Assembly: GCA_904063045.1 (NCBI GenBank)
Contig: CAJFCJ010000005.1
Span: forward strand, 1,503,988 to 1,567,987
Reading direction: 5' to 3'
Source: Dimorphilus gyrociliatus
Taxonomy: Eukaryota; Animalia; Annelida
Length of the DNA: 64,000 nt
Each line of letters opens with the position of its first letter. Position 1 is the first letter of the stretch. Shown here piece by piece: positions 9,481 through 19,597 of the stretch. Below the pieces are notes generated by a model, which worked only from the letters and a program-made list of their open reading frames with translations, was not told where the DNA came from and did no database searches. Made by a program: the position numbers and the translations under genes.

Positions 9481-10397
9481 TTATTATCGCTCAGCACGCA
9501 TATGTCTATTAAATAATCCAAATTGAACGGTTGATTTACTAGATACTTAACAACTTGCAAATTGAAACAAGTTGAAATTCAAGATAGTCGTTTATTTACG
9601 AAGAAGAAATAGTTTTAAAAGTAAATGTTGTGCTTTTTCTATCTCCTATGTGTTACCGGAAAAGCAAAACATTCGGTTTGCACCACGTGATCAAATAACA
9701 ACACGTTCGGTTTAAATAAGCAGAACTTGATTATGCGATGATTATAACTTTAAAAAGTTTAATTTATCAAACGTTTGCGAGTGTGTGCAGTACTTATGAA
9801 AAAATTATACAAATTAAACGAGAAACTAAGTTTCTTAATTTGTATATTTCGTACAATTATCAACAGTCGAATATTTAATGAATATTAATTAAAGAATCGA
9901 CTTGGGTGTACGTGCACTTAAATACAATATAGAGATTTATACGTATGAATTGCGGGAAAAAATAGTCTCGTTGACATATTTATCCAGGTGGCTACCTCAA
10001 CAAAACCAGCTGGAGATTTTCAAAATTAACGTTACGATTACATTCACGTCAAACTTTGTCAGTTTATAAATGAGTAGATTGAGTTGTGAATCTATATTTT
10101 CTAAGGAGGCAATCGTTTAGTGGACAAAAATTAAAAAAAGTGTTTTTAAATATTTGAATAAACATCAATGTTAATTTTGTCAATGAATATGGAAAACAAA
10201 GGATGCAAATTTGGATATGTATTATTTTCAACTCTAAGTGTTATTTTATGTTTGTAAATATTAAAATGCATTCACCTAATTATAATAAATTCCCATTTAT
10301 ACACCGTCTATCGAAAACAGCGGCTATATCGAGCGGATTTTATATTCACGCTAGTAAGTCTACATCTAGTAATCTAATAGAAAAAATTGTCGATAGA

Positions 10398-11122
10398 ATG
10401 AACTATACAACTGCCGAAGTGGAAATGGCAAAAAACTTTGTCGGATTAGGACTTGGTTTTGGTTTTGTTTTAATATTACCTTTTGGAATTTCCACCATAT
10501 TTGGTTTAAGTTTAGTGATGTTCGCGAAAAACTCTTGTTGGGTGAGAAAATTTTGCGTTGTAAATCCCATTTGTTTGCTCCTTAGACTAATTGTAAATAA
10601 TTTTTTTTTCAGTTTGTATTTCATGTAGTCCTCGGGTTTGTAATTAATGTTTTAAGTTTGGCAGCTGCATTATGTCTTAGTTATGCAATTCGAGGGTTAA
10701 AAACTATAAATAAGGAACGGATTAGATTCGAAAGTAAGTTTAACAATCTGCTTTACGTCTATATTTAATAATATTATGCTTTTAAATATTTTTGTTGATT
10801 AATCTAATCTTGCATTTAAGATTTTACGAATGCAACATCACCAGATAAATTAAACGAAATCATTGCCTTCTTGATATCTTCTTGTGTTTTATATTTTATA
10901 GCTTACATATGCTATGTCATATCAACATTATTAGTATGCTTTGTTTGTCGAGAAGTGGAAAAATTATTGGGTTCATTGTCAATTAAATTTCCAATGAGGC
11001 CAACCATTATTGAAGTGACTGGAAAAGGACCAATAGCTCCTGAGGATTTAGTCAATGATTCTGAATCCGCAAAACCCATTCAACCGTCAGAGGCAGTCTC
11101 TACTACTAGAGGGAATAAATAA
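10398..11122 (+). CDS. Four-TM membrane protein, MS4A/CD20-like (exons 10398-10541, 10613-10733, 10821-11122; start uncertain)
   Basis: Phase-consistent GT-AG splicing gives a continuous ORF of about 188 aa with 4 hydrophobic segments and a polar tail. The family call is by topology and weak similarity only. Confidence 0.6.
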
Positions 11123-11520
11123 CTTCTAAATTTATTCATATATACTTATATATTCATCTCGTTGTTTTTGTATTTTGTGCCGAGTTTTGCTTTCTTGTTT
11201 ACCCTTTTTTTTAATTAATTTACTTTATCGTTTCATGCACAAGAAATATCTTTATTCGAATAAAAAAGAATTCTTCTATTGAGTGCAAAGTTTTTTTGGT
11301 ATGGAAATAAAGTCTTACACAACCAAATTTAGATGATTTAGAATATCACAAGCACCAAACCTGTTTTTGACAAACAAACGATGGGGCCTAGACCAATCGA
11401 TCGAGGCTGGATTCCCATTCCAAACTAATATATTTCTCTCTTCTAGGCAATCTATCGGGAGGGAGCTGGTTACCAAGCTGATGAAATTTCTGCCTCTTGC
11501 CCGCATTTGACGGCCAAGTC

Positions 11521-13289
11521 ATGTGTTCGCTTGATTTGGAAGAAACGGCAAACCGACTAGGAATTGAATATTTCCTGGTATCTTACGCACCTTTAAATAC
11601 AGATGTAAGATGTTCTCTTATACCCAAACGTGCAATTCGAGAAGTGCAAAAAAACGGATGCGGAATGCCCCCTGCAATGTTCTTCAAATCCACTCCTGTA
11701 GAACCAGAGATGATAATTAAACCTGACCCAAAAAGTTTAATACAATTGCCATGGAAATCTAAGTTTGCCTGGTTAAGCAGGTAATATTATTTTTTGTACA
11801 ACTAAAATAGTTATAGTATATGATGATTCCAATTCATTATACAGTGACTTATATATGTATGGAAAACCGTTTGACCAATGTCCCAGGGCTTGTTTAAAGA
11901 GGCAGGTGGAACTCGCCAAGAGTATGGGATTTTCCATGAAATCTGGAGTAGAGCGTAATATACTACTTTGTTTATTAATTATGAAAATATCTAAAGTTTA
12001 ATTTAAATTACCTTTGATCCTTAAAGACCAATATTTTGTTGATTGATATAATCAATGTTTTTTATGCAATTTATTACCTCAATCAATTATTAATTGATTT
12101 TTATTTTTCTCTTTCTTTTCGTTCAGCTGAATTTACACTTTTAACAAAGGATGGAAAAGAATTCGCTGATAAAATTGACATGCAACAGCCCATGAGCCTT
12201 CAAGATCCACTTGCGATTATGAGACATTCCAAGTTTTTAACTGATCTATCTGATTCTATGGAAAAGATTGGGTGGAATCCATATGAAATCGACCACGAGT
12301 CATCTTGCTGTCAATACGAAATTAACTTTGATTATGTTGATTGCTTAGAAACAGCTGATAGATTTATGTTTATGAAATTCATGATTAAAGAACTAGCAGA
12401 AATTCATGGTATAAAAGCTTCGTTTATGCCTGTGCCTATACCTAGAATACTCTGCGGTAATAACAGTTGATTCAAATTTTTATAATCCGACTTTTCGTAT
12501 AACGATATTAATAATGTGTTATCTTTTATATTAGCCAATGGCTTGCATGTTAATGTTTCCCTTTGGAATAATAGCACACATACGAATGCATTTGAGGATG
12601 ATTCGGATGAGTTGGGACTATCCCAAATTGCTTATAACTTTATAGGTGGTTTAATGAAACATGTTGAGGATACATGCGCCATTTGCTGTCCAACAGTAAA
12701 TAGTTACAAGAGGTAAATGTTGGCTTTTAGAATAATTACCCTTAAACATCTATTCTTTTTCCACAGATTAAATAGAGGTGTATGGTGTCCCAACGTAATA
12801 TCTTGGGGTGGTAATAACAGGACTGTTCTATTTAGAATTCCAGCCTCTAATAGGTTAAATTCCAAGAAATAGGATGTTTGTCTAACGGTTGTCCTAATTC
12901 TTTCAGGGTCGAACACAGATTGCCTGATGCGACTGCAAATCCCTATCTAATGCAAGCGGCAATCTTGGCTTCGGGCCTGGATGGAATCATAAATAAGATT
13001 CGTAATTATTTTGCAATGAATAATAAATTAGCAAAATAACATAATAAATCATCTCGTTACAGATCCAGGGCCGAAAGCTGATTTCGATGTTCAGATGCAA
13101 TCCGAGCAATTTAAGAAAGTACCGAAAAACCTTGAAAAGGCTTTAGATAAATTGGAATCAAGTACATTCTTGAAAGATTCTCTTGGAGAACCAATTATCG
13201 ATGGTTTTATTCACCTTAAAAGAAAAGAATGGAATCTGTTCCATTCGGAAATTACACCGTGGGAAATAGATTATTATTCTAATGCTTAA
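11521..13289 (+). CDS. Bacterial-type glutamine synthetase family ligase, GlnT (rhizobial 'GS III')/GmaS gamma-glutamylmethylamide synthetase-like; 7 exons
   Basis: Exons 11521-11780, 11845-11954, 12128-12456, 12535-12712, 12767-12853, 12907-13001, 13063-13289 join in frame. Motifs: SLIQLPWK..AW, KSGVEPEF, DHE..CQYEINF, FMP.P..ANGLHVNVSLW, PTVNSYKR, SWGGNNRT, RVEHRLPDATANPYL, EWNLFHSEITPWE. Confidence 0.9.
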
Positions 13290-14325
13290 TTCTTTGATTT
13301 ATAATTATATAGCATATTTTTACACAGTCTGCATGTTTAATTAAATATAAATTAGGAGAAGTAGTTACATTTAGTTACTAATAAATAATATTGTAACACT
13401 TATCTCGTTATAAAAGAATACATCCAGCTAGAGTTTACGTAGAATTTGGAATATTATAACAAACTTGAAAAGTGTGCAACTCTGTAATGTTCAGCTTCTC
13501 GATAATTAGTCTACATTCAACCCTCGAGATCTATTTACTTGAAAGTTCGCTAATTATATCATGATAGAACTAATATAATATACATTTAATACGTGCTTTA
13601 TTTCATATACATGTATACTAATATACAATATATATAAAGTATCTGTTGTTTGTTAGATTATCCTAAATAAAGATGTCAAAGTATACATTCTAATAAAAGA
13701 AGTAAATAGTTTTATTTTCACACTAATATTTCTATTGTAATCGGGCAAAACTGTCCTGAGTACCATTCACGTTTAAAGAAAACGTCAAAAGTTAACTCTT
13801 TCATACTTGACAGCCTGATAGCTTGATAGTTTACTTATAATCCTTCAATTTGGATATTAAATTTAAATTTGATCTATAATTATCGAACGTAAAAATTATT
13901 GAGACCGAGGCAACTAAAGAGTTCAGATAATTGATGCTTTATATAGTTTTCAAATAACTCTAGAGGTGTCGCATACAGGGACTCTAATGAAGAAGCAATT
14001 GGCCATCAACTATCGCCTCCTATAATCTATAGTTGAGCGCATGAGTCTCTTATCAATTTTACATTTGTAGAAGCGTCTCAATAAAACATCGTTCATACTT
14101 AACAAGGTAAGAAATATTTCACTAAATTTTACAAGAAATATTCAATATATCAATTCGTTTGACGTTCTGAAAGAAGAATTCTTAGCCTAGGCTGAGGTTA
14201 TAGGTTATAAGGCAGATTTTAATCATTTTGATTAGATCTACATTATGAGAGAGTAATTATTGGCAAACAATAAGCATGCTGAAAAATCAGCCGTTAAGTA
14301 CGGAAGTCGAATATGAAAAGTTTGT

Positions 14326-15960
14326 CTAATTTTTTTCATCGAGGTCCTTTGAAATTTCTATGGAAACTCGAATTGCACTCTCAATTGCGCCTTCTATCCA
14401 TCCGTGGAAATCCGATGTTTGTTCTCCGGCGAAGTGGATGCGACCATGAGTCTCTTGAAAACTTTTCCTGAAATGATTTGTACATTGTCCAGGTAGGCAC
14501 ATAGAAAATCCTCCTCTTGAGAACGGATCTTTTGACCATTTTTTCACCACAGCATTTTTATACAAAGACTTCACATCCATTTTAAACATATTTGATAATT
14601 GTGTAATATGGCCTTCTATGATTTGTGAATCAGACATATTTGCTAGTTCTCTGGCTTTATCGCCTTCACCTAAAGCTCCGTAGAAAACATTTCGTCCAGA
14701 ATATTTTCCAGGTACATTCATTGGTCCTGTATCCCAATCTGTAATGATATCTCCTTCTTTAACTCCAAAAGATTCCCAGAAAGGTTTTGAAAATATTTCA
14801 ACAACTCTAGTTCCCGTTTCGAAATGCATTTTGTCAATTGCTTCTCGTTTCAAAGAAGTCAATTTAGGTTGAAATTTCAATACTCGTAGCGCACCCAAAG
14901 ATGTCGCAACAACAACGTAGTCAGAACATTCCTTTTCTAATTTAGATTGACCATTGATTTTATAGTAAACACAAGCGTAATCTTTCTTCGTTGATACTTT
15001 TACTACTGTAGAATTGAACTGGATAGTATTATTCTTTAGGCTCGATGCGACAGATTTTGGGAGATTGTCAAGGCCTGAATTTACTAGTTTTGCGGGAGCA
15101 GCACCGTACGTAAACATCATAAGTACGAACTCGTACATGGAAATAGATCTCATTTCATAAAAATATGATAAATACAGAATATTTTTAGTTAGTTCATTTG
15201 AAAATTTACACTTTTTTCTACAGTAATCTTCCAACGAAAACTTATCAAAATATTCAAGAGCATCCATCCAAGTTCTTGATTCTATATCATCCATAATTTG
15301 TTCTTGAAATATTTGCATATTTTCGGCAATAGTAGAATTAGTTTCCGGTTTGTCAAAAACATAGCTAAAAGGGTTTTTTTCCCTCAAAGCAGCTTTGTAT
15401 CGCTTTATTCTTCCATTTAATGCAATTAAATTGTTATTGACGATCCTACGAAACGATGAAACTTTTATCGAAAAATTAGACATGATAGATAATGCAAATA
15501 TGTGTGTAACAGGTATTTGAAGAGCGCCAAGTTCCCCTTTCCATCCAGACGGATCCCTATACGTATGAATTCGTCCACCAACTCTATTGCTAGCCTCAAA
15601 TATTTTCACCCTTTGGCCCATTTGCTGTAACAGTTTTGCTGTAACAGTTCCTGATATTCCAGCTCCCAGTATTATAACTTTCTTTGACATATCCTTTCTT
15701 AACGGTCCTAAAAATTGAATTCAAATGTAGTTAGATCTTATTTAAGTATAGAATCTAAAAATCTCACCATCATTTAGGAAATTGTAGTATTGAAAAAAGT
15801 CATATCTTGTAGGGGGTAAAGACATTTGATTAGCCCTTTCATAATGCAACTTCGGAGGATTTTTCGGATATCTATAATTAGTGTTCGATACATGACAAAC
15901 TGTAACTAACGGTTCAAACAATAAAATCACAAATAAACAGAATTTTTTACAATTTTCCAT
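14326..15960 (-). CDS. Secreted L-amino acid oxidase-like flavin amine oxidase, copy 1 (exons 15960-15768, 15707-14326)
   Basis: Signal peptide MENCKKFCLFVILLFEPLVTVC; GAGISG FAD motif, EASNRVGGRI, KKWSKDPFSRGG, IHFAGEQT..HGWIEGAIESA; one 60-bp GT-AG intron. Confidence 0.9.
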
Positions 15961-16651
15961 AACTGGCTCTCTTTCAATAAAGTACAATAATGATTTAATA
16001 TGCTTTTAGAAAAGCTCAAACTTAATATATAGGCCTTTTTCTATTCTGTAATGCACAACGAGTTTAATCATATTGAAGAGGTTCACAATTTTTCAAAGCC
16101 TTAGATTTCGTTTTATTATTTAAAATTTCATCTTGGAAGGTGAGTTCTTTAAAAAAATCATCTATAGCACTATTTCATTTTTACACTCAATCATTATGTA
16201 ATATATTTAATTTATTCAACATCTATAATATTATCAAAAGTTATTTTTGTCTATAGTAAACAATATTTCAAAACATTATAGTAAGTTAGATTGCCGTGTA
16301 ATTCGAAAAGCTATTAAAAAATCTTTTCATTAATTAATAACGAATTTTCTCTCTTTTTACAAGGAGCTAATCGATGTAAATTTAACTGTATATGATCGTA
16401 TTGAAAAATCCAATTTGTAAATATCAACTCCAATATTTGTTCATTTCCCATCATAGACAATTACTTTACATTCTAATCTAGGAAGCACAATAAAGATTAA
16501 TATCACGATATATTTCCATAAAAAGAGTCTAATTTTTTCTGTGTATAATTTGAAAAGTTCTCTTTATCTACAGATTTTAATAATTATTTTTAATATTTCA
16601 GATATAAACTTAGAAAGTAATACAATCCAACTTTAATTAACACTTCTACTC

Positions 16652-17777
16652 ATGAAAATGACACTCTCCTCTACTATTTTACGATTTTTAACTATAGTCA
16701 TCCTGTTTGCTTCTACCTCTCAATGTAAATACGAATCTCGTTTATTTAAAGAAAGCTTTTATCATTTATATCTAACATTTTATTACTTTAAAGCTTTTCA
16801 AGATTGCGAAAAGGTCGAAGGAAAGGGGATAATCATTACGGGTGCTTCTAAGGGAATTGGTAGAGAAATAGCTAAACAGTTATCAAAATGTAACGTTAAT
16901 TTGATGGCGGTCGGTAGAAATGTTGAAAATTTAGAATCATTGCAAGAGTTTATGACATCTAACAATGAAAAAGGAACGTTTACAACCCTATCCATAGACG
17001 TTGCAAAGGAAGGAAACCCTAAGAAATTAGTTCAAGTTATTATATTTCTTAGCTAAAACAATCATTCACTCTCTGTGAAAATAACGACTTATTTGCAGAA
17101 GGCTCTAACACAATTCAACAAGATCGATCACGTTTTTTTCTCACATGCCCTTTTAGGAAATTATTCCCACTTTACTGGATTGGAAGAAGACTTCGATTTA
17201 ATTAGACAGATGATGGAAGTTAATTTCTATTCAGTTACTCGTTTGATCGCAGAAATTACAAAATATTCTAAAGGTTATATACCAAATTTTATAATATTTT
17301 CATCTCAACTGGGTAAGTTTACATTAAATAATCATTTGTAAAATTTCAAAAAGATGTTTACAGTTGCCGAGCCTCATCCTACGACATTCGCTTATTGTGT
17401 AAGTAAATCTGCTCTTATTGCCTTCGCCAAGACACTGCAATTTAAGCTTTATCAAAAGCAAATATCTGTAAAAATAGTTGATGTACCGGGAACTGGTATG
17501 TTTTTCTGTTTATATTATATCATATTTGCTTACAAATATAATTGTTATAATAGATACACATGGTCTCTATACAAGTCATAAAATCTTTTATCACAATTAT
17601 AATAATAAAGAACGCTCAAGTAAACTGGGGAAAGATTTCGATGAATTTTTCGAGTTGAAGGTAAAACCCCATTTGGCAGATGTGAAAGATGTTGCTGAAG
17701 ACATAATCTTATCAGCATTAGGCAATGAAGAACATGTTGACCTAGTGGAGAAGCATAAGCGTCATTCTGAATTATAG
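16652..17777 (+). CDS. Classical short-chain dehydrogenase/reductase with N-terminal signal/anchor (11beta-HSD1-like), about 5 exons
   Basis: TGASKGIG cofactor motif, SS, YCVSK catalytic motif; hydrophobic N-terminus; small GT-AG introns link the ORF-track pieces. Confidence 0.85.
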
Positions 17778-17903
17778 AAATGCTTTGAATGTGATCTTTT
17801 ATTAATTAGAACGCATAGTGATAACATTATTTGTAATACAGTATAAAAAATATAAACAAACTTTTTATTACATAGATAACAAATCTTTATCAATGACGAC
17901 TTT

Positions 17904-19597
17904 CTAGTCAGTTCTTTTCTGTATTTCTAGAGCCACCCGTATTCCACTTTCGACAGCACCTTCCACCCAAGCGTGACTATCTGAAGTATGTTCCCCGGCA
18001 AAGTGTATTCTACCAGAAGATTTTTTCAAATTCTTGTTAAAATCATTAGAACATTGTTTGGGAAGGCAAAGAGAGAATCCCCCTAAACTAAAAGGATCAT
18101 TCAGCCATTTATAAACTACTCCACTATCAAACACAGTTTTTACTTTCTTTCTGAACAGTGTTGATAACTTATTTAAATGATATTCTATCAAGTCTAATTC
18201 CGATAAACCATTCAGCAAATGTGTTGTCCGACCTTCACCAACCCCACCATAAATTAGAGATCTTTCCACTTGTCTTCCAGGAATATTTATAGACCCTGTA
18301 TGCCAATCAGTTGTGATATCACCTTGATAAATACCTTCAGATTCCCAAAAAGGCGTTTTGAATTTTTCAACAATTCTAGTTGCCGATTCAAAGTTCATAT
18401 TGTTTATTGCCCTTTGTTTCTTTACATCAAGTTTTGGCTTAAAGTTGATTATCTTTAAGGCAGCTGTTTAAAAGGAATTTTCAAATGAATTAGGTATGTA
18501 ATTTTTTTCTGTAACAGATATGAATTTGTCACCTATTGACGTTGCTACAATAACATACTCTGCACATTCTGTTTCTATTTCTGTACTTTTGTTTATTGAG
18601 TAATGCACGCATGAATATGTTTTACGATCGCTTATTCTTTGAACCTTTGCCTTAAATAGAATAGTATTATTGGCAAAATCTTCCGATATCTTTCTAGGAA
18701 GGTTATCCAAACCATCCTTAACAACTTGCGGATATTCAATATTAAATGAGAACATCATTCTAATGAGTTCGTACATGCTCACATAACTTAAGCCTTCAAA
18801 ATTCATGCAAAATAATATTTGTTGAATAGCTGCTTCTGAAAAGTTGCAACAATTTTCTAAATATTCTTTAACTGAAAAACTATCCATATAAGTCATAGCC
18901 TTCTTCCAATCCAACTTCTCTAAGTCATCTAAAATAGCTTCTTCATACATTTGAATCAATTCAGACACAGTATACCTGCTCTCTTCCTTTGTAAAATCCA
19001 ATTTAAATGGATTTTTTTTCAAGCTAAATATACTCTCTCGTAAACGGATCCCATTCATAAAAAGAAAATTTCGACTACCAGTCCGTTGGAATGGTACGAT
19101 ATTTAATGAATAATTTCTTATTAAAGATAGTACTAATTTATGACAATCTAGAATTTGAATAGCTCCTAACTCCCCCACCCAACCTGACGGATGTCTAAAA
19201 GTTTTAATACGGCCGCCAACTTTATCACTAGCTTCAATAATCTTAATGTTATGACCCATTTGTTTTAGCAGCCTACCCGCTGTTAATCCAGACATTCCCG
19301 CACCAACAATGATAACTTTTTTTGACGCTTTATTCCTCATTGGACCTAAAAAATAAGTCCTTAAATGCACATTTATATTAGAAAATACAATAGAACTATA
19401 CCATGATTTAGTATTTCTAAGTATTTTTCGTAATTGAACCTCTTAGGTGGGGGTGCTATCCGTTGCATTCTTTGATGATGCGCTTCAGTTTGTTCATTCT
19501 GTAACGATCTTAAACGTTTCTCCCAATGTTGACAAATAATTCTGGAAAAAGTTAAAAAAAAGAATGCAGAAAACTCTAAACCACTGCAAATGTTCAT
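17904..19597 (-). CDS. Secreted L-amino acid oxidase-like flavin amine oxidase, copy 2 (3 exons; introns near 19405-19351 and 18532-18464)
   Basis: GAGMSG, EASDKVGGRI, KWLNDPFSLGG, IHFAGEHT..HAWVEGAVESG; collinear paralog of copy 1; putative signal peptide MNICSGLEFSAFFFLTFS. Confidence 0.9.

What the first reader, a model, noticed from the sequence alone, without database searches (positions are those of the whole stretch)
11521..13289. Domesticated horizontally acquired bacterial GlnT/GmaS-type gene with six spliceosomal introns
Seen: the protein is collinear end to end with proteobacterial GlnT/GmaS as recalled (LDL...GI.YFL.S, SLIQLPWK..AW, GVEPEF, DHE..Q.E.N, NSYKR, NNRT, RLPD..NPYL, EWN). 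It has six GT-AG introns of 53-173 bp, is AT-rich like its neighbours and is flanked by animal genes, which argues against contamination. Established: animal GS is type II and very different in sequence; GmaS serves bacterial methylamine use. Metal and ATP ligands (ExE, E, H, ExR) are retained. Inference: an old, functional HGT.
Basis: partly seen in the sequence, partly recalled or inferred. Interest (0 to 1): 0.88.

Follow-up and report, generated by a model that had tools for sequence, protein, structure and literature searches.

The report
Bacterial-type GmaS/GlnT ligase gene in annelids
This worm genome carries an intact, expressed, correctly spliced gene for a bacterial-type glutamate-amine ligase that annelids, alone among the animals seen here, share and most likely got from bacteria before they diversified; its amine pocket has since changed.

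Summary
Window 11521-13289 (+) encodes a 428-aa protein from 7 exons with six GT-AG introns (64, 172, 78, 54, 53, 61 bp). All six junctions appear exactly as modelled in spliced contigs of three public runs.

Every exon matches NCBIfam TIGR03105 (GlnT/GmaS) best and in order. The best solved structure for a 61%-identical ortholog is Rhodovulum GmaS (7cql).

The closest proteins are all annelid: Dimorphilus 71%, siboglinids and Helobdella 56%, Capitella 54%, plus Owenia. Next come thousands of bacterial GlnT/GmaS at 42-46%. In an ML tree the annelids form one clade (100/100; with Owenia 97/84) inside bacterial diversity.

Eight intron positions and phases are shared from Owenia to Ridgeia, and the window keeps six of them. 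A six-residue deletion in the gate loop is also shared. So the gene was acquired once and gained its introns before crown annelids diverged. dN/dS against a close relative is about 0.08.

Metal, glutamate and phosphate ligands and the GmaS catalytic residues are kept. Six positions nearly invariant in bacteria, three of them lining the methylamine pocket, are replaced.

A 2021 Riftia genome paper already noted annelid-only "prokaryote-like GS I" genes but read them as differential loss. The transfer reading is well supported but not proven. The substrate is unknown.

The parts
11521..11780 (+). Exon 1: start codon and the N-terminal domain. It includes the position of RhGmaS Lys30', which is Ser here.
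   Evidence: (TIGR03105 positions 2-82)
11781..11844 (+). Intron 1, 64 bp, GT..AG, phase 2. The position is shared with Helobdella, Owenia and Ridgeia.
11845..11954 (+). Exon 2, 110 nt. Helobdella, Owenia, Ridgeia and the L008 relative have an exon of the same length.
11955..12126 (+). Intron 2, 172 bp, phase 1. It splits the GVE|PEF metal-ligand motif and is shared by all five annelid loci compared.
12127..12456 (+). Exon 3, 330 nt: the catalytic core, with the YEIDHE and CCQYEIN motifs. It equals three exons (161+102+67 nt) in Capitella, Helobdella and Ridgeia, so two phase-0 introns were lost here.
12457..12534 (+). Intron 3, 78 bp, phase 1, shared by all annelid loci compared.
12535..12712 (+). 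Exon 4: the metal-ligand His (NGLHVNVS) through to NSYKR.
12713..12766 (+). Intron 4, 54 bp, phase 2, shared by all annelid loci compared.
12767..12853 (+). Exon 5, 87 nt: the shortened gate loop, with Trp where glutamine synthetase has the flap Glu (GVWCP), followed by GGNNRT and FRIP.
   Evidence: PMC7948447
12854..12906 (+). Intron 5, 53 bp, phase 2, shared by all annelid loci compared.
12907..13001 (+). Exon 6, 95 nt: RVEHRLPD, holding the equivalents of Glu325 and Arg327.
13002..13062 (+). Intron 6, 61 bp, phase 1, shared by all annelid loci compared.
13063..13289 (+). Exon 7: the C-terminal helices and the stop codon.
11446..11520 (+). Minimal 5' UTR as seen in the X5 transcript contig. 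The X2 contig is colinear with the genome back to at least 11300. A 9-codon upstream ORF lies at 11481-11510.
13290..13600 (+). 3' UTR. Transcript contigs run past 13500 by about 100-117 nt.

Best explanation
The gene descends from a bacterial GlnT/GmaS-type (TIGR03105) glutamate-amine ligase that entered the nuclear genome of an ancestor of living annelids. It gained at least eight spliceosomal introns before Owenia split from the other annelids and has been inherited vertically since. The window's lineage later lost two of those introns. Shown here: the gene is intact, host-like in composition, transcribed, spliced as modelled and under strong purifying selection. Inferred: the protein is probably a cytosolic, GS-I-like oligomeric, ATP- and Mg-dependent ligase. 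It would phosphorylate the gamma-carboxyl of glutamate and pass the acyl group to an amine, using the GmaS-type residues (equivalents of Arg312, Asp177 and Glu186) instead of the Glu-flap/Asp50' mechanism of ammonia-using glutamine synthetases. Three of the seven residues lining the methylamine pocket are replaced (Tyr147 to Gln, Gln175 to Glu, Lys30' to Ser), which makes the pocket more acidic. The gate loop is six residues shorter. So the preferred amine is probably not the bacterial one. A different or larger cationic amine is my guess; the substrate is unknown.
For: Gene model and splicing. Family: every exon matches TIGR03105 best and in order; orthologs score 379-462 bits on TIGR03105 against 227-271 on GlnA; the best PDB match is RhGmaS 7cql at 381 bits, against 230 or less for classical GS. 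Distribution: the only animal relatives found are annelids (Dimorphilus, siboglinids, Helobdella, Capitella, Owenia, plus unlabelled transcript contigs), followed by thousands of bacterial GlnT/GmaS at 42-46% identity. Tree: annelid clade 100/100, with Owenia 97/84; cyanobacterial, Sulfobacillus and metagenome sequences branch deeper at 98-100. Single old origin: eight intron positions with identical phases are shared by Owenia, Ridgeia, Helobdella and Capitella, and the window has six of them; the six-residue loop deletion and the WCP motif are shared. The orthologs lie on large animal scaffolds next to eukaryotic genes. Function: dN/dS is 0.08-0.11 against the ortholog in L008. All Mg, glutamate and phosphate ligands and the catalytic residues are kept, while K30', Y147, Q175, W189, G231 and H237 are replaced; these are invariant or nearly so in 61 bacterial sequences. 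Residue roles come from PMC7948447.
Against: The AU test does not reject a tree with all eukaryotic copies (annelids, Paulinella, a diplonemid, a liverwort) in one clade (p=0.19). The donor lineage is unresolved: the annelid clade is sister to a broad bacterial crown group on a long stem. The root rests on very long outgroup branches. Lists of the best 120 hits cannot exclude divergent copies in other animal phyla, and a paper reports sponge sequences near prokaryotic GS I. The window protein's summed score (about 354 bits) and its orthologs' scores fall below the TIGR03105 equivalog cut-off of 469.6. Two adenine/ribose contacts (H237N, W189F) and Gly231 are changed, so reduced or altered catalysis, or a non-enzymatic role like that of lengsin, is possible. 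No activity or substrate was tested.
Confidence: 0.72

Rival explanations
1. The gene is an ancient eukaryotic GS-I-like gene, inherited vertically and lost in nearly all other animals. This is how the Riftia genome paper read the annelid-only clade.
For: PMC8789280 interprets the annelid-only 'prokaryotic group I' genes as secondary loss in other lophotrochozoans and mentions sponge sequences. The AU test does not reject one clade of all eukaryotic copies (p=0.19).
Against: The annelid clade lies inside bacterial TIGR03105 diversity, with bacterial lineages branching deeper at 98-100 support. Identity to bacteria is 42-46% over the full length. No other animal phylum appears among the best hits of three large searches. 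The other eukaryotic copies are from a rhizarian, a diplonemid and a liverwort; they keep the bacterial pocket residues and group apart from annelids in the free tree, and Paulinella and the diplonemid also keep the long loop. This reading would need very many independent losses.
Confidence: 0.12
2. The gene is a domesticated pseudo-enzyme, or has a structural or regulatory role as lengsin does, with little or no ligase activity.
For: Six positions nearly invariant in bacteria are changed, including two adenine/ribose contacts and Gly231. The scores are below the equivalog cut-off. Two relatives have lost catalytic residues: Owenia has D177V, and P0004 has D177F, R312K and R317C.
Against: In the window and most annelids every Mg, glutamate and phosphate ligand and the Arg312, Asp177 and Glu186 equivalents are kept. 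dN/dS is about 0.08.
Confidence: 0.13
3. The enzyme is a true glutamine synthetase (ammonia as substrate), or an unchanged methylamine ligase.
For: The family model is named 'type III glutamate--ammonia ligase', and the closest solved structure is a methylamine ligase.
Against: Trp replaces the catalytic flap Glu of glutamine synthetases, as in GmaS (PMC7948447). Three of the seven methylamine-pocket residues are replaced at positions invariant or nearly so in bacteria, and the gate loop is shortened.
Confidence: 0.1
4. The sequence is bacterial contamination or an assembly chimera.
For: None was found beyond the bacterial affinity of the protein.
Against: The six spliceosomal introns are removed in transcript contigs of three runs. 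Composition is host-like. An independent 65.7-kb contig is colinear with the window. Orthologs with the same introns lie on chromosome-scale scaffolds of four other annelids.
Confidence: 0.01

Closest known systems
Bacterial gamma-glutamylmethylamide synthetase, GmaS (Rhodovulum sp. 12E13, PDB 7cql; PMC7948447)
   Same: Collinear over the full length at 42-46% identity. It shares Trp in place of the flap Glu, all Mg, glutamate and phosphate ligands, and the catalytic Arg312, Asp177 and Glu186 equivalents.
   Different: Pocket residues Tyr147, Gln175 and Lys30' are Gln, Glu and Ser here. His237, Trp189 and Gly231 are Asn, Phe and Ala. The gate loop is six residues shorter. The gene is nuclear with six introns, in an animal.
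NCBIfam TIGR03105, 'type III glutamate--ammonia ligase' (GlnT of rhizobia and relatives)
   Same: It is the best-scoring family for every exon and for all annelid orthologs, and the annelid clade lies inside this family in the tree.
   Different: Scores fall below the curated equivalog cut-off: about 354 bits summed for the window and 379-462 for orthologs, against 469.6. Bacterial members score 515-676 bits.
Annelid 'prokaryote-like GS group I' genes reported in the Riftia pachyptila genome paper (PMC8789280)
   Same: Most likely the same gene family. The paper reports annelid-only genes clustering with prokaryotic GS I, and my siboglinid hits (Lamellibrachia, Ridgeia) fit that description.
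   Different: The paper did not assign them to GlnT/GmaS, read them as differential loss rather than transfer, and gave no intron or active-site analysis. I could not see its tree, so the identity of the two sets is inferred.
Lengsin and other eukaryotic GS-I-like proteins
   Same: Both are GS-I-fold proteins found in animals alongside the canonical type II enzyme.
   Different: According to PMC8789280, annelids have lengsins as a clade separate from the prokaryote-like group. I did not test this because no lengsin sequence was available through the tools.
E. coli PuuA (gamma-glutamylputrescine synthetase) and GlnA
   Same: They share the fold and the chemistry of a gamma-glutamyl-phosphate intermediate.
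   Different: Both are far more distant: NF045547 and TIGR00653 score well below TIGR03105, and both sit on very long branches as outgroups.

Membership tests
TIGR03105 (GlnT/GmaS-type ligases) | Full-length, collinear match to the family model, better than to any other GS family | tested here: met
   The seven exons cover model positions 2-434 of 435 in order. TIGR03105 is the best family for six of the seven exons; exon 6 scores slightly higher on GlnA (38 against 35 bits).
TIGR03105 (GlnT/GmaS-type ligases) | Score at or above the curated equivalog cut-off (469.6 bits) | tested here: not met
   The exon scores sum to about 354 bits (a rough sum). Annelid orthologs score 379-462 bits and bacterial members 515-676 bits.
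TIGR03105 (GlnT/GmaS-type ligases) | Phylogenetic placement within the family | tested here: met
   The annelid clade branches inside the family; cyanobacterial, Sulfobacillus and metagenome members branch deeper at 98-100 support.
GmaS (glutamate--methylamine ligase) | Trp in place of the GS flap Glu, and the catalytic Arg312, Asp177 and Glu186 | tested here: met
   All four are present in the window protein. Residue roles are taken from PMC7948447.
GmaS (glutamate--methylamine ligase) | Conserved methylamine pocket (Tyr147, Gln175, Asp177, Glu179, Glu186, Asn188, Lys30') | tested here: not met
   Four of the seven are kept. Tyr147 is Gln, Gln175 is Glu and Lys30' is Ser. These positions are conserved in 59-61 of 61 bacterial sequences.
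GmaS (glutamate--methylamine ligase) | Methylamine-dependent ligase activity | not testable with these tools
   This needs a biochemical assay.
Type I glutamine synthetase GlnA (TIGR00653) | Best match to the GlnA model, with the flap Glu present | tested here: not met
   GlnA scores are about half the TIGR03105 scores, and the flap Glu is Trp.
Lengsin / vertically inherited animal GS-I-like clade | Groups with lengsins of other animals in a tree | not tested
   No lengsin sequence could be obtained through the tools. PMC8789280 reports lengsins and the prokaryote-like group as distinct clades in annelids.
Domesticated bacterium-to-animal gene transfer | Integrated in host DNA: spliceosomal introns, host composition, animal flanking genes, expression | tested here: met
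Domesticated bacterium-to-animal gene transfer | Nested among donor-domain sequences and absent from other animals | tested here: inconclusive
   Nesting is supported, and no other animal phylum appears among the best hits. However, only the best 120 hits are listed, the AU test for a single eukaryotic clade gives p=0.19, and a paper mentions sponge sequences.

The most novel reading that the evidence does not exclude
After the transfer, annelids reshaped the amine pocket and gate loop of a bacterial methylamine ligase. The result would be a phylum-specific enzyme that makes a gamma-glutamyl amide of some other amine, giving annelids a step of nitrogen or amine metabolism that no other animal has.
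Probability: 0.35. Interest if true: 0.65.

Novelty: new member of a known kind. Interest (0 to 1): 0.48.

Why it matters
Well-supported, ancient, phylum-wide transfers of metabolic genes from bacteria to animals are uncommon. This one comes with an unusually clear internal clock: eight intron positions shared from Owenia to siboglinids. It therefore shows how a bacterial gene becomes a normal animal gene, and marks a candidate shared derived character of annelids. It also offers a different reading of a published observation, in which annelid-only "prokaryotic" GS I genes were taken as differential loss, and it assigns them to the GmaS/GlnT family. The conserved catalytic machinery combined with a remodelled amine pocket gives a directly testable case of change of function after transfer. 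The practical gain is a defined target for substrate profiling in tractable annelids such as Platynereis, Capitella and Dimorphilus.

Tried and rejected
1. **Gene cluster.** The two downstream oxidases are animal-type L-amino-acid oxidases. None of the Capitella, Helobdella, Owenia or Ridgeia loci has an oxidase beside the ligase gene. The SDR next to the Capitella gene shares only a 35-residue Rossmann match with the window's SDR. I treat the neighbourhood as coincidence.

2. **Whole spliced protein in the database tools.** It has no reference and I did not type it. I used exons by reference, orthologs by id, and the spliced protein only inside scripts.

3. **Dimorphilus protein P0155.** The look-up of encoding contigs has no record of it, so its locus was not compared.

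4. **Source organisms of three contigs.** The organisms behind the transcript contigs P0152 and P0004 and the genomic contig L008 could not be named. Only run accessions are given.

5. **AU test of a single eukaryotic clade.** It did not reject (p=0.19), so it gives no support either way.

6. **Literature.** Searches linking GmaS or gamma-glutamylmethylamide to annelids found nothing.

7. **First call of the look-up of sequencing runs.** It failed because the machine was busy; the repeat worked.

8. **First splice search on L008.** It found no model because my search bounds were too narrow. The widened search worked.

Full report
**1. Observation**

Reading 11000-14000 and joining the open frames at GT..AG sites gives seven exons: 11521-11780, 11845-11954, 12127-12456, 12535-12712, 12767-12853, 12907-13001 and 13063-13289, on the + strand. 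They form a 1287-nt frame of 428 aa plus stop. The six introns are 64, 172, 78, 54, 53 and 61 bp, in phases 2,1,1,2,2,1.

The window is uniformly AT-rich, at 28-39% G+C. The CDS has 38% G+C (GC3 33%) and its introns 23%. That resembles the neighbouring oxidase ORF (35.5%, GC3 28%) and a CDK5RAP3 exon (35%, GC3 33%).

**2. Expression and contiguity**

Contigs from three public runs (X2, X3, X5, from two studies) lie on the locus with all six introns skipped at exactly the modelled junctions, GT..AG, with no mismatches. A 65.7-kb contig from X1 carries the unspliced locus. X1 may be the sample the assembly came from, so it is not independent. The run kinds are only guessed in the table, but spliced contigs of 1.7-2.4 kb can only come from RNA. 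So the gene is transcribed and spliced as predicted, and contamination or a chimera is excluded.

**3. Surroundings**

- Upstream, on the minus strand, are exons of CDK5RAP3 (PF05600, E=7e-29).
- Downstream is a 454-aa ORF on the minus strand (14326-15690) with PF01593. Its best solved relatives are vertebrate and snake-venom L-amino-acid oxidases.
- Then comes an SDR gene (16652-17777, +) and a second oxidase of the same kind (17904-19597, -).

The orthologous loci in Capitella, Helobdella, Owenia and Ridgeia have no oxidase beside the gene. The SDR beside the Capitella gene shares only a 35-residue generic match with the window's SDR. I see no conserved cluster.

**4. Family**

Each exon was scanned by reference. 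Six of the seven match NCBIfam TIGR03105 ('type III glutamate--ammonia ligase', the GlnT/GmaS family) best; exon 6 scores slightly higher on GlnA (38 against 35 bits). Together they cover model positions 2-434 of 435 in order. Pfam finds the GS catalytic domain. The exon scores sum to about 354 bits, below the curated equivalog cut-off of 469.6. Full-length annelid orthologs score 379-462 bits on TIGR03105, against 227-271 on GlnA and 197-229 on the gamma-glutamylputrescine synthetase model. Bacterial members score 515-676 bits.

For the 61%-identical ortholog P0152, the best solved structure is GmaS of Rhodovulum sp. 12E13 (7cql, 381 bits). A second glutamate-methylamine ligase follows (256 bits), then classical glutamine synthetases at 230 bits or less.

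**5. Relatives**

Exon 3 (109 aa) was searched against 1.84 billion cluster representatives and found 704 proteins. All those checked belong to the GlnT/GmaS family. The closest carry a CCQYE motif and a short SYKR-x5-WCP loop instead of the bacterial DANGQFE and SYKR-x11-W(A/S)P.

Named members are all annelids:

- Dimorphilus gyrociliatus DgyrCDS8096
- Capitella teleta (two near-identical models)
- Helobdella robusta
- Lamellibrachia satsuma
- Ridgeia piscesae
- Owenia fusiformis

Identity of the window protein to these is 71% (Dimorphilus), 61% (transcript contig P0152), 56% (siboglinid and Helobdella) and 54% (Capitella). After them come thousands of bacterial proteins at 42-46% over the full length. 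These are labelled type III glutamate-ammonia ligase or glutamate-methylamine ligase and come largely from marine Pseudomonadota.

A profile of nine annelid sequences again listed only annelid-type proteins above the bacteria. Searching with Owenia found bacteria (often cyanobacteria) at 43-47% and one liverwort protein, but no other animal. The window's own protein is not in the database, so the species has no deposited annotation there. It is a relative of Dimorphilus. A genomic contig from another run (L008) holds an ortholog with identical exon lengths and 86% amino-acid identity.

**6. Phylogeny**

I built an ML tree of 75 sequences (LG+C20+F+G4 by PMSF, ultrafast bootstrap / SH-aLRT) with E. 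coli GlnA and PuuA as outgroups.

- The window groups with Dimorphilus (100/100), inside an annelid clade of nine rows (100/100).
- Owenia is sister to that clade (97/84).
- Bacterial family members branch deeper, with 98-100 bootstrap support: a cyanobacterial cluster (Nodosilinea/Leptolyngbya), Sulfobacillus, and a metagenome cluster.
- The other eukaryotic copies fall elsewhere among the bacteria: Paulinella, the diplonemid Namystynia and the liverwort Calypogeia.

Four limits apply. The annelid stem is long. The donor is unresolved, because the clade is sister to a broad crown group. The outgroup branches are very long. An AU test does not reject forcing all eukaryotic copies into one clade (delta lnL 13.3, p=0.19).

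**7. One old origin**

I derived exact exon maps for Capitella, Helobdella, Owenia and Ridgeia from their loci and placed the introns on an alignment. Eight positions with identical phases (2,1,0,0,1,2,2,1) are shared by Owenia, Ridgeia and Helobdella, and by Capitella wherever its model reaches. All six window introns are among them. The window's exon 3 (330 nt) equals three exons of 161+102+67 nt elsewhere, so two phase-0 introns were lost, which fits a compact genome.

The loop deletion and WCP motif are also shared, Owenia included. Owenia belongs to the earliest-branching annelid lineage (established knowledge). The gene therefore already had these introns in the last common ancestor of living annelids. 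The orthologs sit on large scaffolds, up to 35.7 Mb, next to eukaryotic genes: NDUFC2, eIF-1A and ribosomal protein L32.

**8. Selection and active site**

Against the L008 ortholog, dN is 0.07 and dS 0.63-0.98, giving dN/dS of 0.08-0.11.

I mapped the residues defined for RhGmaS (PMC7948447) onto an alignment with 61 bacterial sequences.

| Role in RhGmaS | Residues | State in the window protein |
|---|---|---|
| Mg ligands | Glu122, Glu124, Glu179, Glu186, His235, Glu325 | all kept |
| Glutamate ligands | Glu124, Glu179, His235, Arg288, Arg327 | all kept |
| Glutamate ligand | Gly231 | Ala |
| Phosphate ligands | Tyr174, Arg312, Arg317, Asn188 | all kept |
| Catalytic | Arg312, Asp177, Glu186 | all kept |
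| Replaces the GS flap Glu | Trp300 | kept |
| Methylamine pocket | Lys30', Tyr147, Gln175 | Ser, Gln, Glu |
| Adenine and ribose contacts | His237, Trp189 | Asn, Phe |

The six replaced positions are conserved in 58-61 of the 61 bacterial sequences, and most annelids share the replacements. The pocket loses a positive charge and gains a negative one, and the gate loop is six residues shorter.

Paulinella and the liverwort keep the bacterial residues. Owenia (D177V) and the divergent contig P0004 (D177F, R312K, R317C) have lost catalytic residues, so not every annelid copy need be an enzyme.

**9. Mechanism**

Shown: an intact, expressed, selected gene of the GmaS/GlnT fold with a complete set of metal, glutamate and phosphate ligands.

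Inferred from the RhGmaS mechanism: ATP and Mg-dependent formation of gamma-glutamyl phosphate, deprotonation of an amine by the Asp177 equivalent, attack on the intermediate, and proton abstraction by the Glu186 equivalent, giving a gamma-glutamyl amide.

Inferred from the pocket changes: the amine is probably neither methylamine nor ammonia. A larger or more cationic amine is a guess.

**10. What is known**

[quoted passage not shown] It says only annelid (and some sponge) sequences cluster with prokaryotic GS I, and it reads this as secondary loss in other lophotrochozoans. That is very likely this gene family, so its existence in annelids is not new.

I found four things in no paper: assignment to GlnT/GmaS, the case for transfer, dating by shared introns, and the remodelled pocket. 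I could not test it myself for lack of a lengsin sequence.

**11. Verdict**

This is an ancient, domesticated GmaS/GlnT-type gene of bacterial ancestry, found among animals only in annelids in these searches. It is probably an active gamma-glutamyl-amine ligase with altered specificity. It is a further case of a known kind (domesticated bacterial metabolic genes in animals), partly anticipated in the literature. Interest is moderate.

Another note of this scan reports a second GlnT/GmaS-like locus on another piece of the same genome (s1-080635). I did not check it.

Noticed in passing
window 14326-15987 (-) and 17904-19597 (-): There are two genes for animal-type L-amino-acid oxidases (PF01593). 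Their best solved relatives are tetrapod and snake-venom LAAOs. Each has a short upstream ORF that looks like a signal-peptide exon. The first has its whole 454-aa catalytic part in one exon.
   Followed up: partly
window 16652-17777 (+): A short-chain dehydrogenase gene of about four exons lies between the two oxidases. It is not orthologous to the SDR that flanks the Capitella ligase gene; they share only a 35-residue generic match.
   Followed up: partly
window 11481-11510 (+): A nine-codon upstream ORF lies in the 5' UTR of the ligase transcript, out of frame with the main start codon.
   Followed up: no
window 13500 to about 14880: One transcript contig of run X3 (2426 nt) continues about 1.4 kb past 13500 into the 3' part of the convergent oxidase gene. 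The two convergent transcripts may overlap, or the assembler may have merged them.
   Followed up: no
L012 (Owenia fusiformis, gene 10001-18081) and protein P0004 (contigs L006, L007): The Owenia ortholog has Val at the Asp177 position. The divergent contig P0004 has Phe there, plus Lys and Cys at the Arg312 and Arg317 positions. Some annelid copies have probably lost ligase chemistry.
   Followed up: partly
proteins P0012, P0051, P0467: GlnT/GmaS-type proteins with bacterial-type active sites also occur in Paulinella chromatophora, the diplonemid Namystynia karyoxenos and the liverwort Calypogeia fissa. They sit apart from annelids in the free tree, so they may be further independent acquisitions, or in part contamination.
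   Followed up: partly
protein P0003 / P0269 (4424 aa, Candidatus Auribacterota MAG): This giant bacterial protein has six separate stretches matching the GS catalytic core. Two other multi-copy proteins were seen: P0039 (1356 aa) and P0086 (2757 aa).
   Followed up: no
L001 (Capitella) and protein P0155 (Dimorphilus): Both public gene models look incomplete. Each starts at the equivalent of the window's exon 2. The Capitella model also carries a 21-residue insert at the position of the last shared intron, which looks like retained intron sequence.
   Followed up: partly
It could be a paralog or a haplotig.
   Followed up: no
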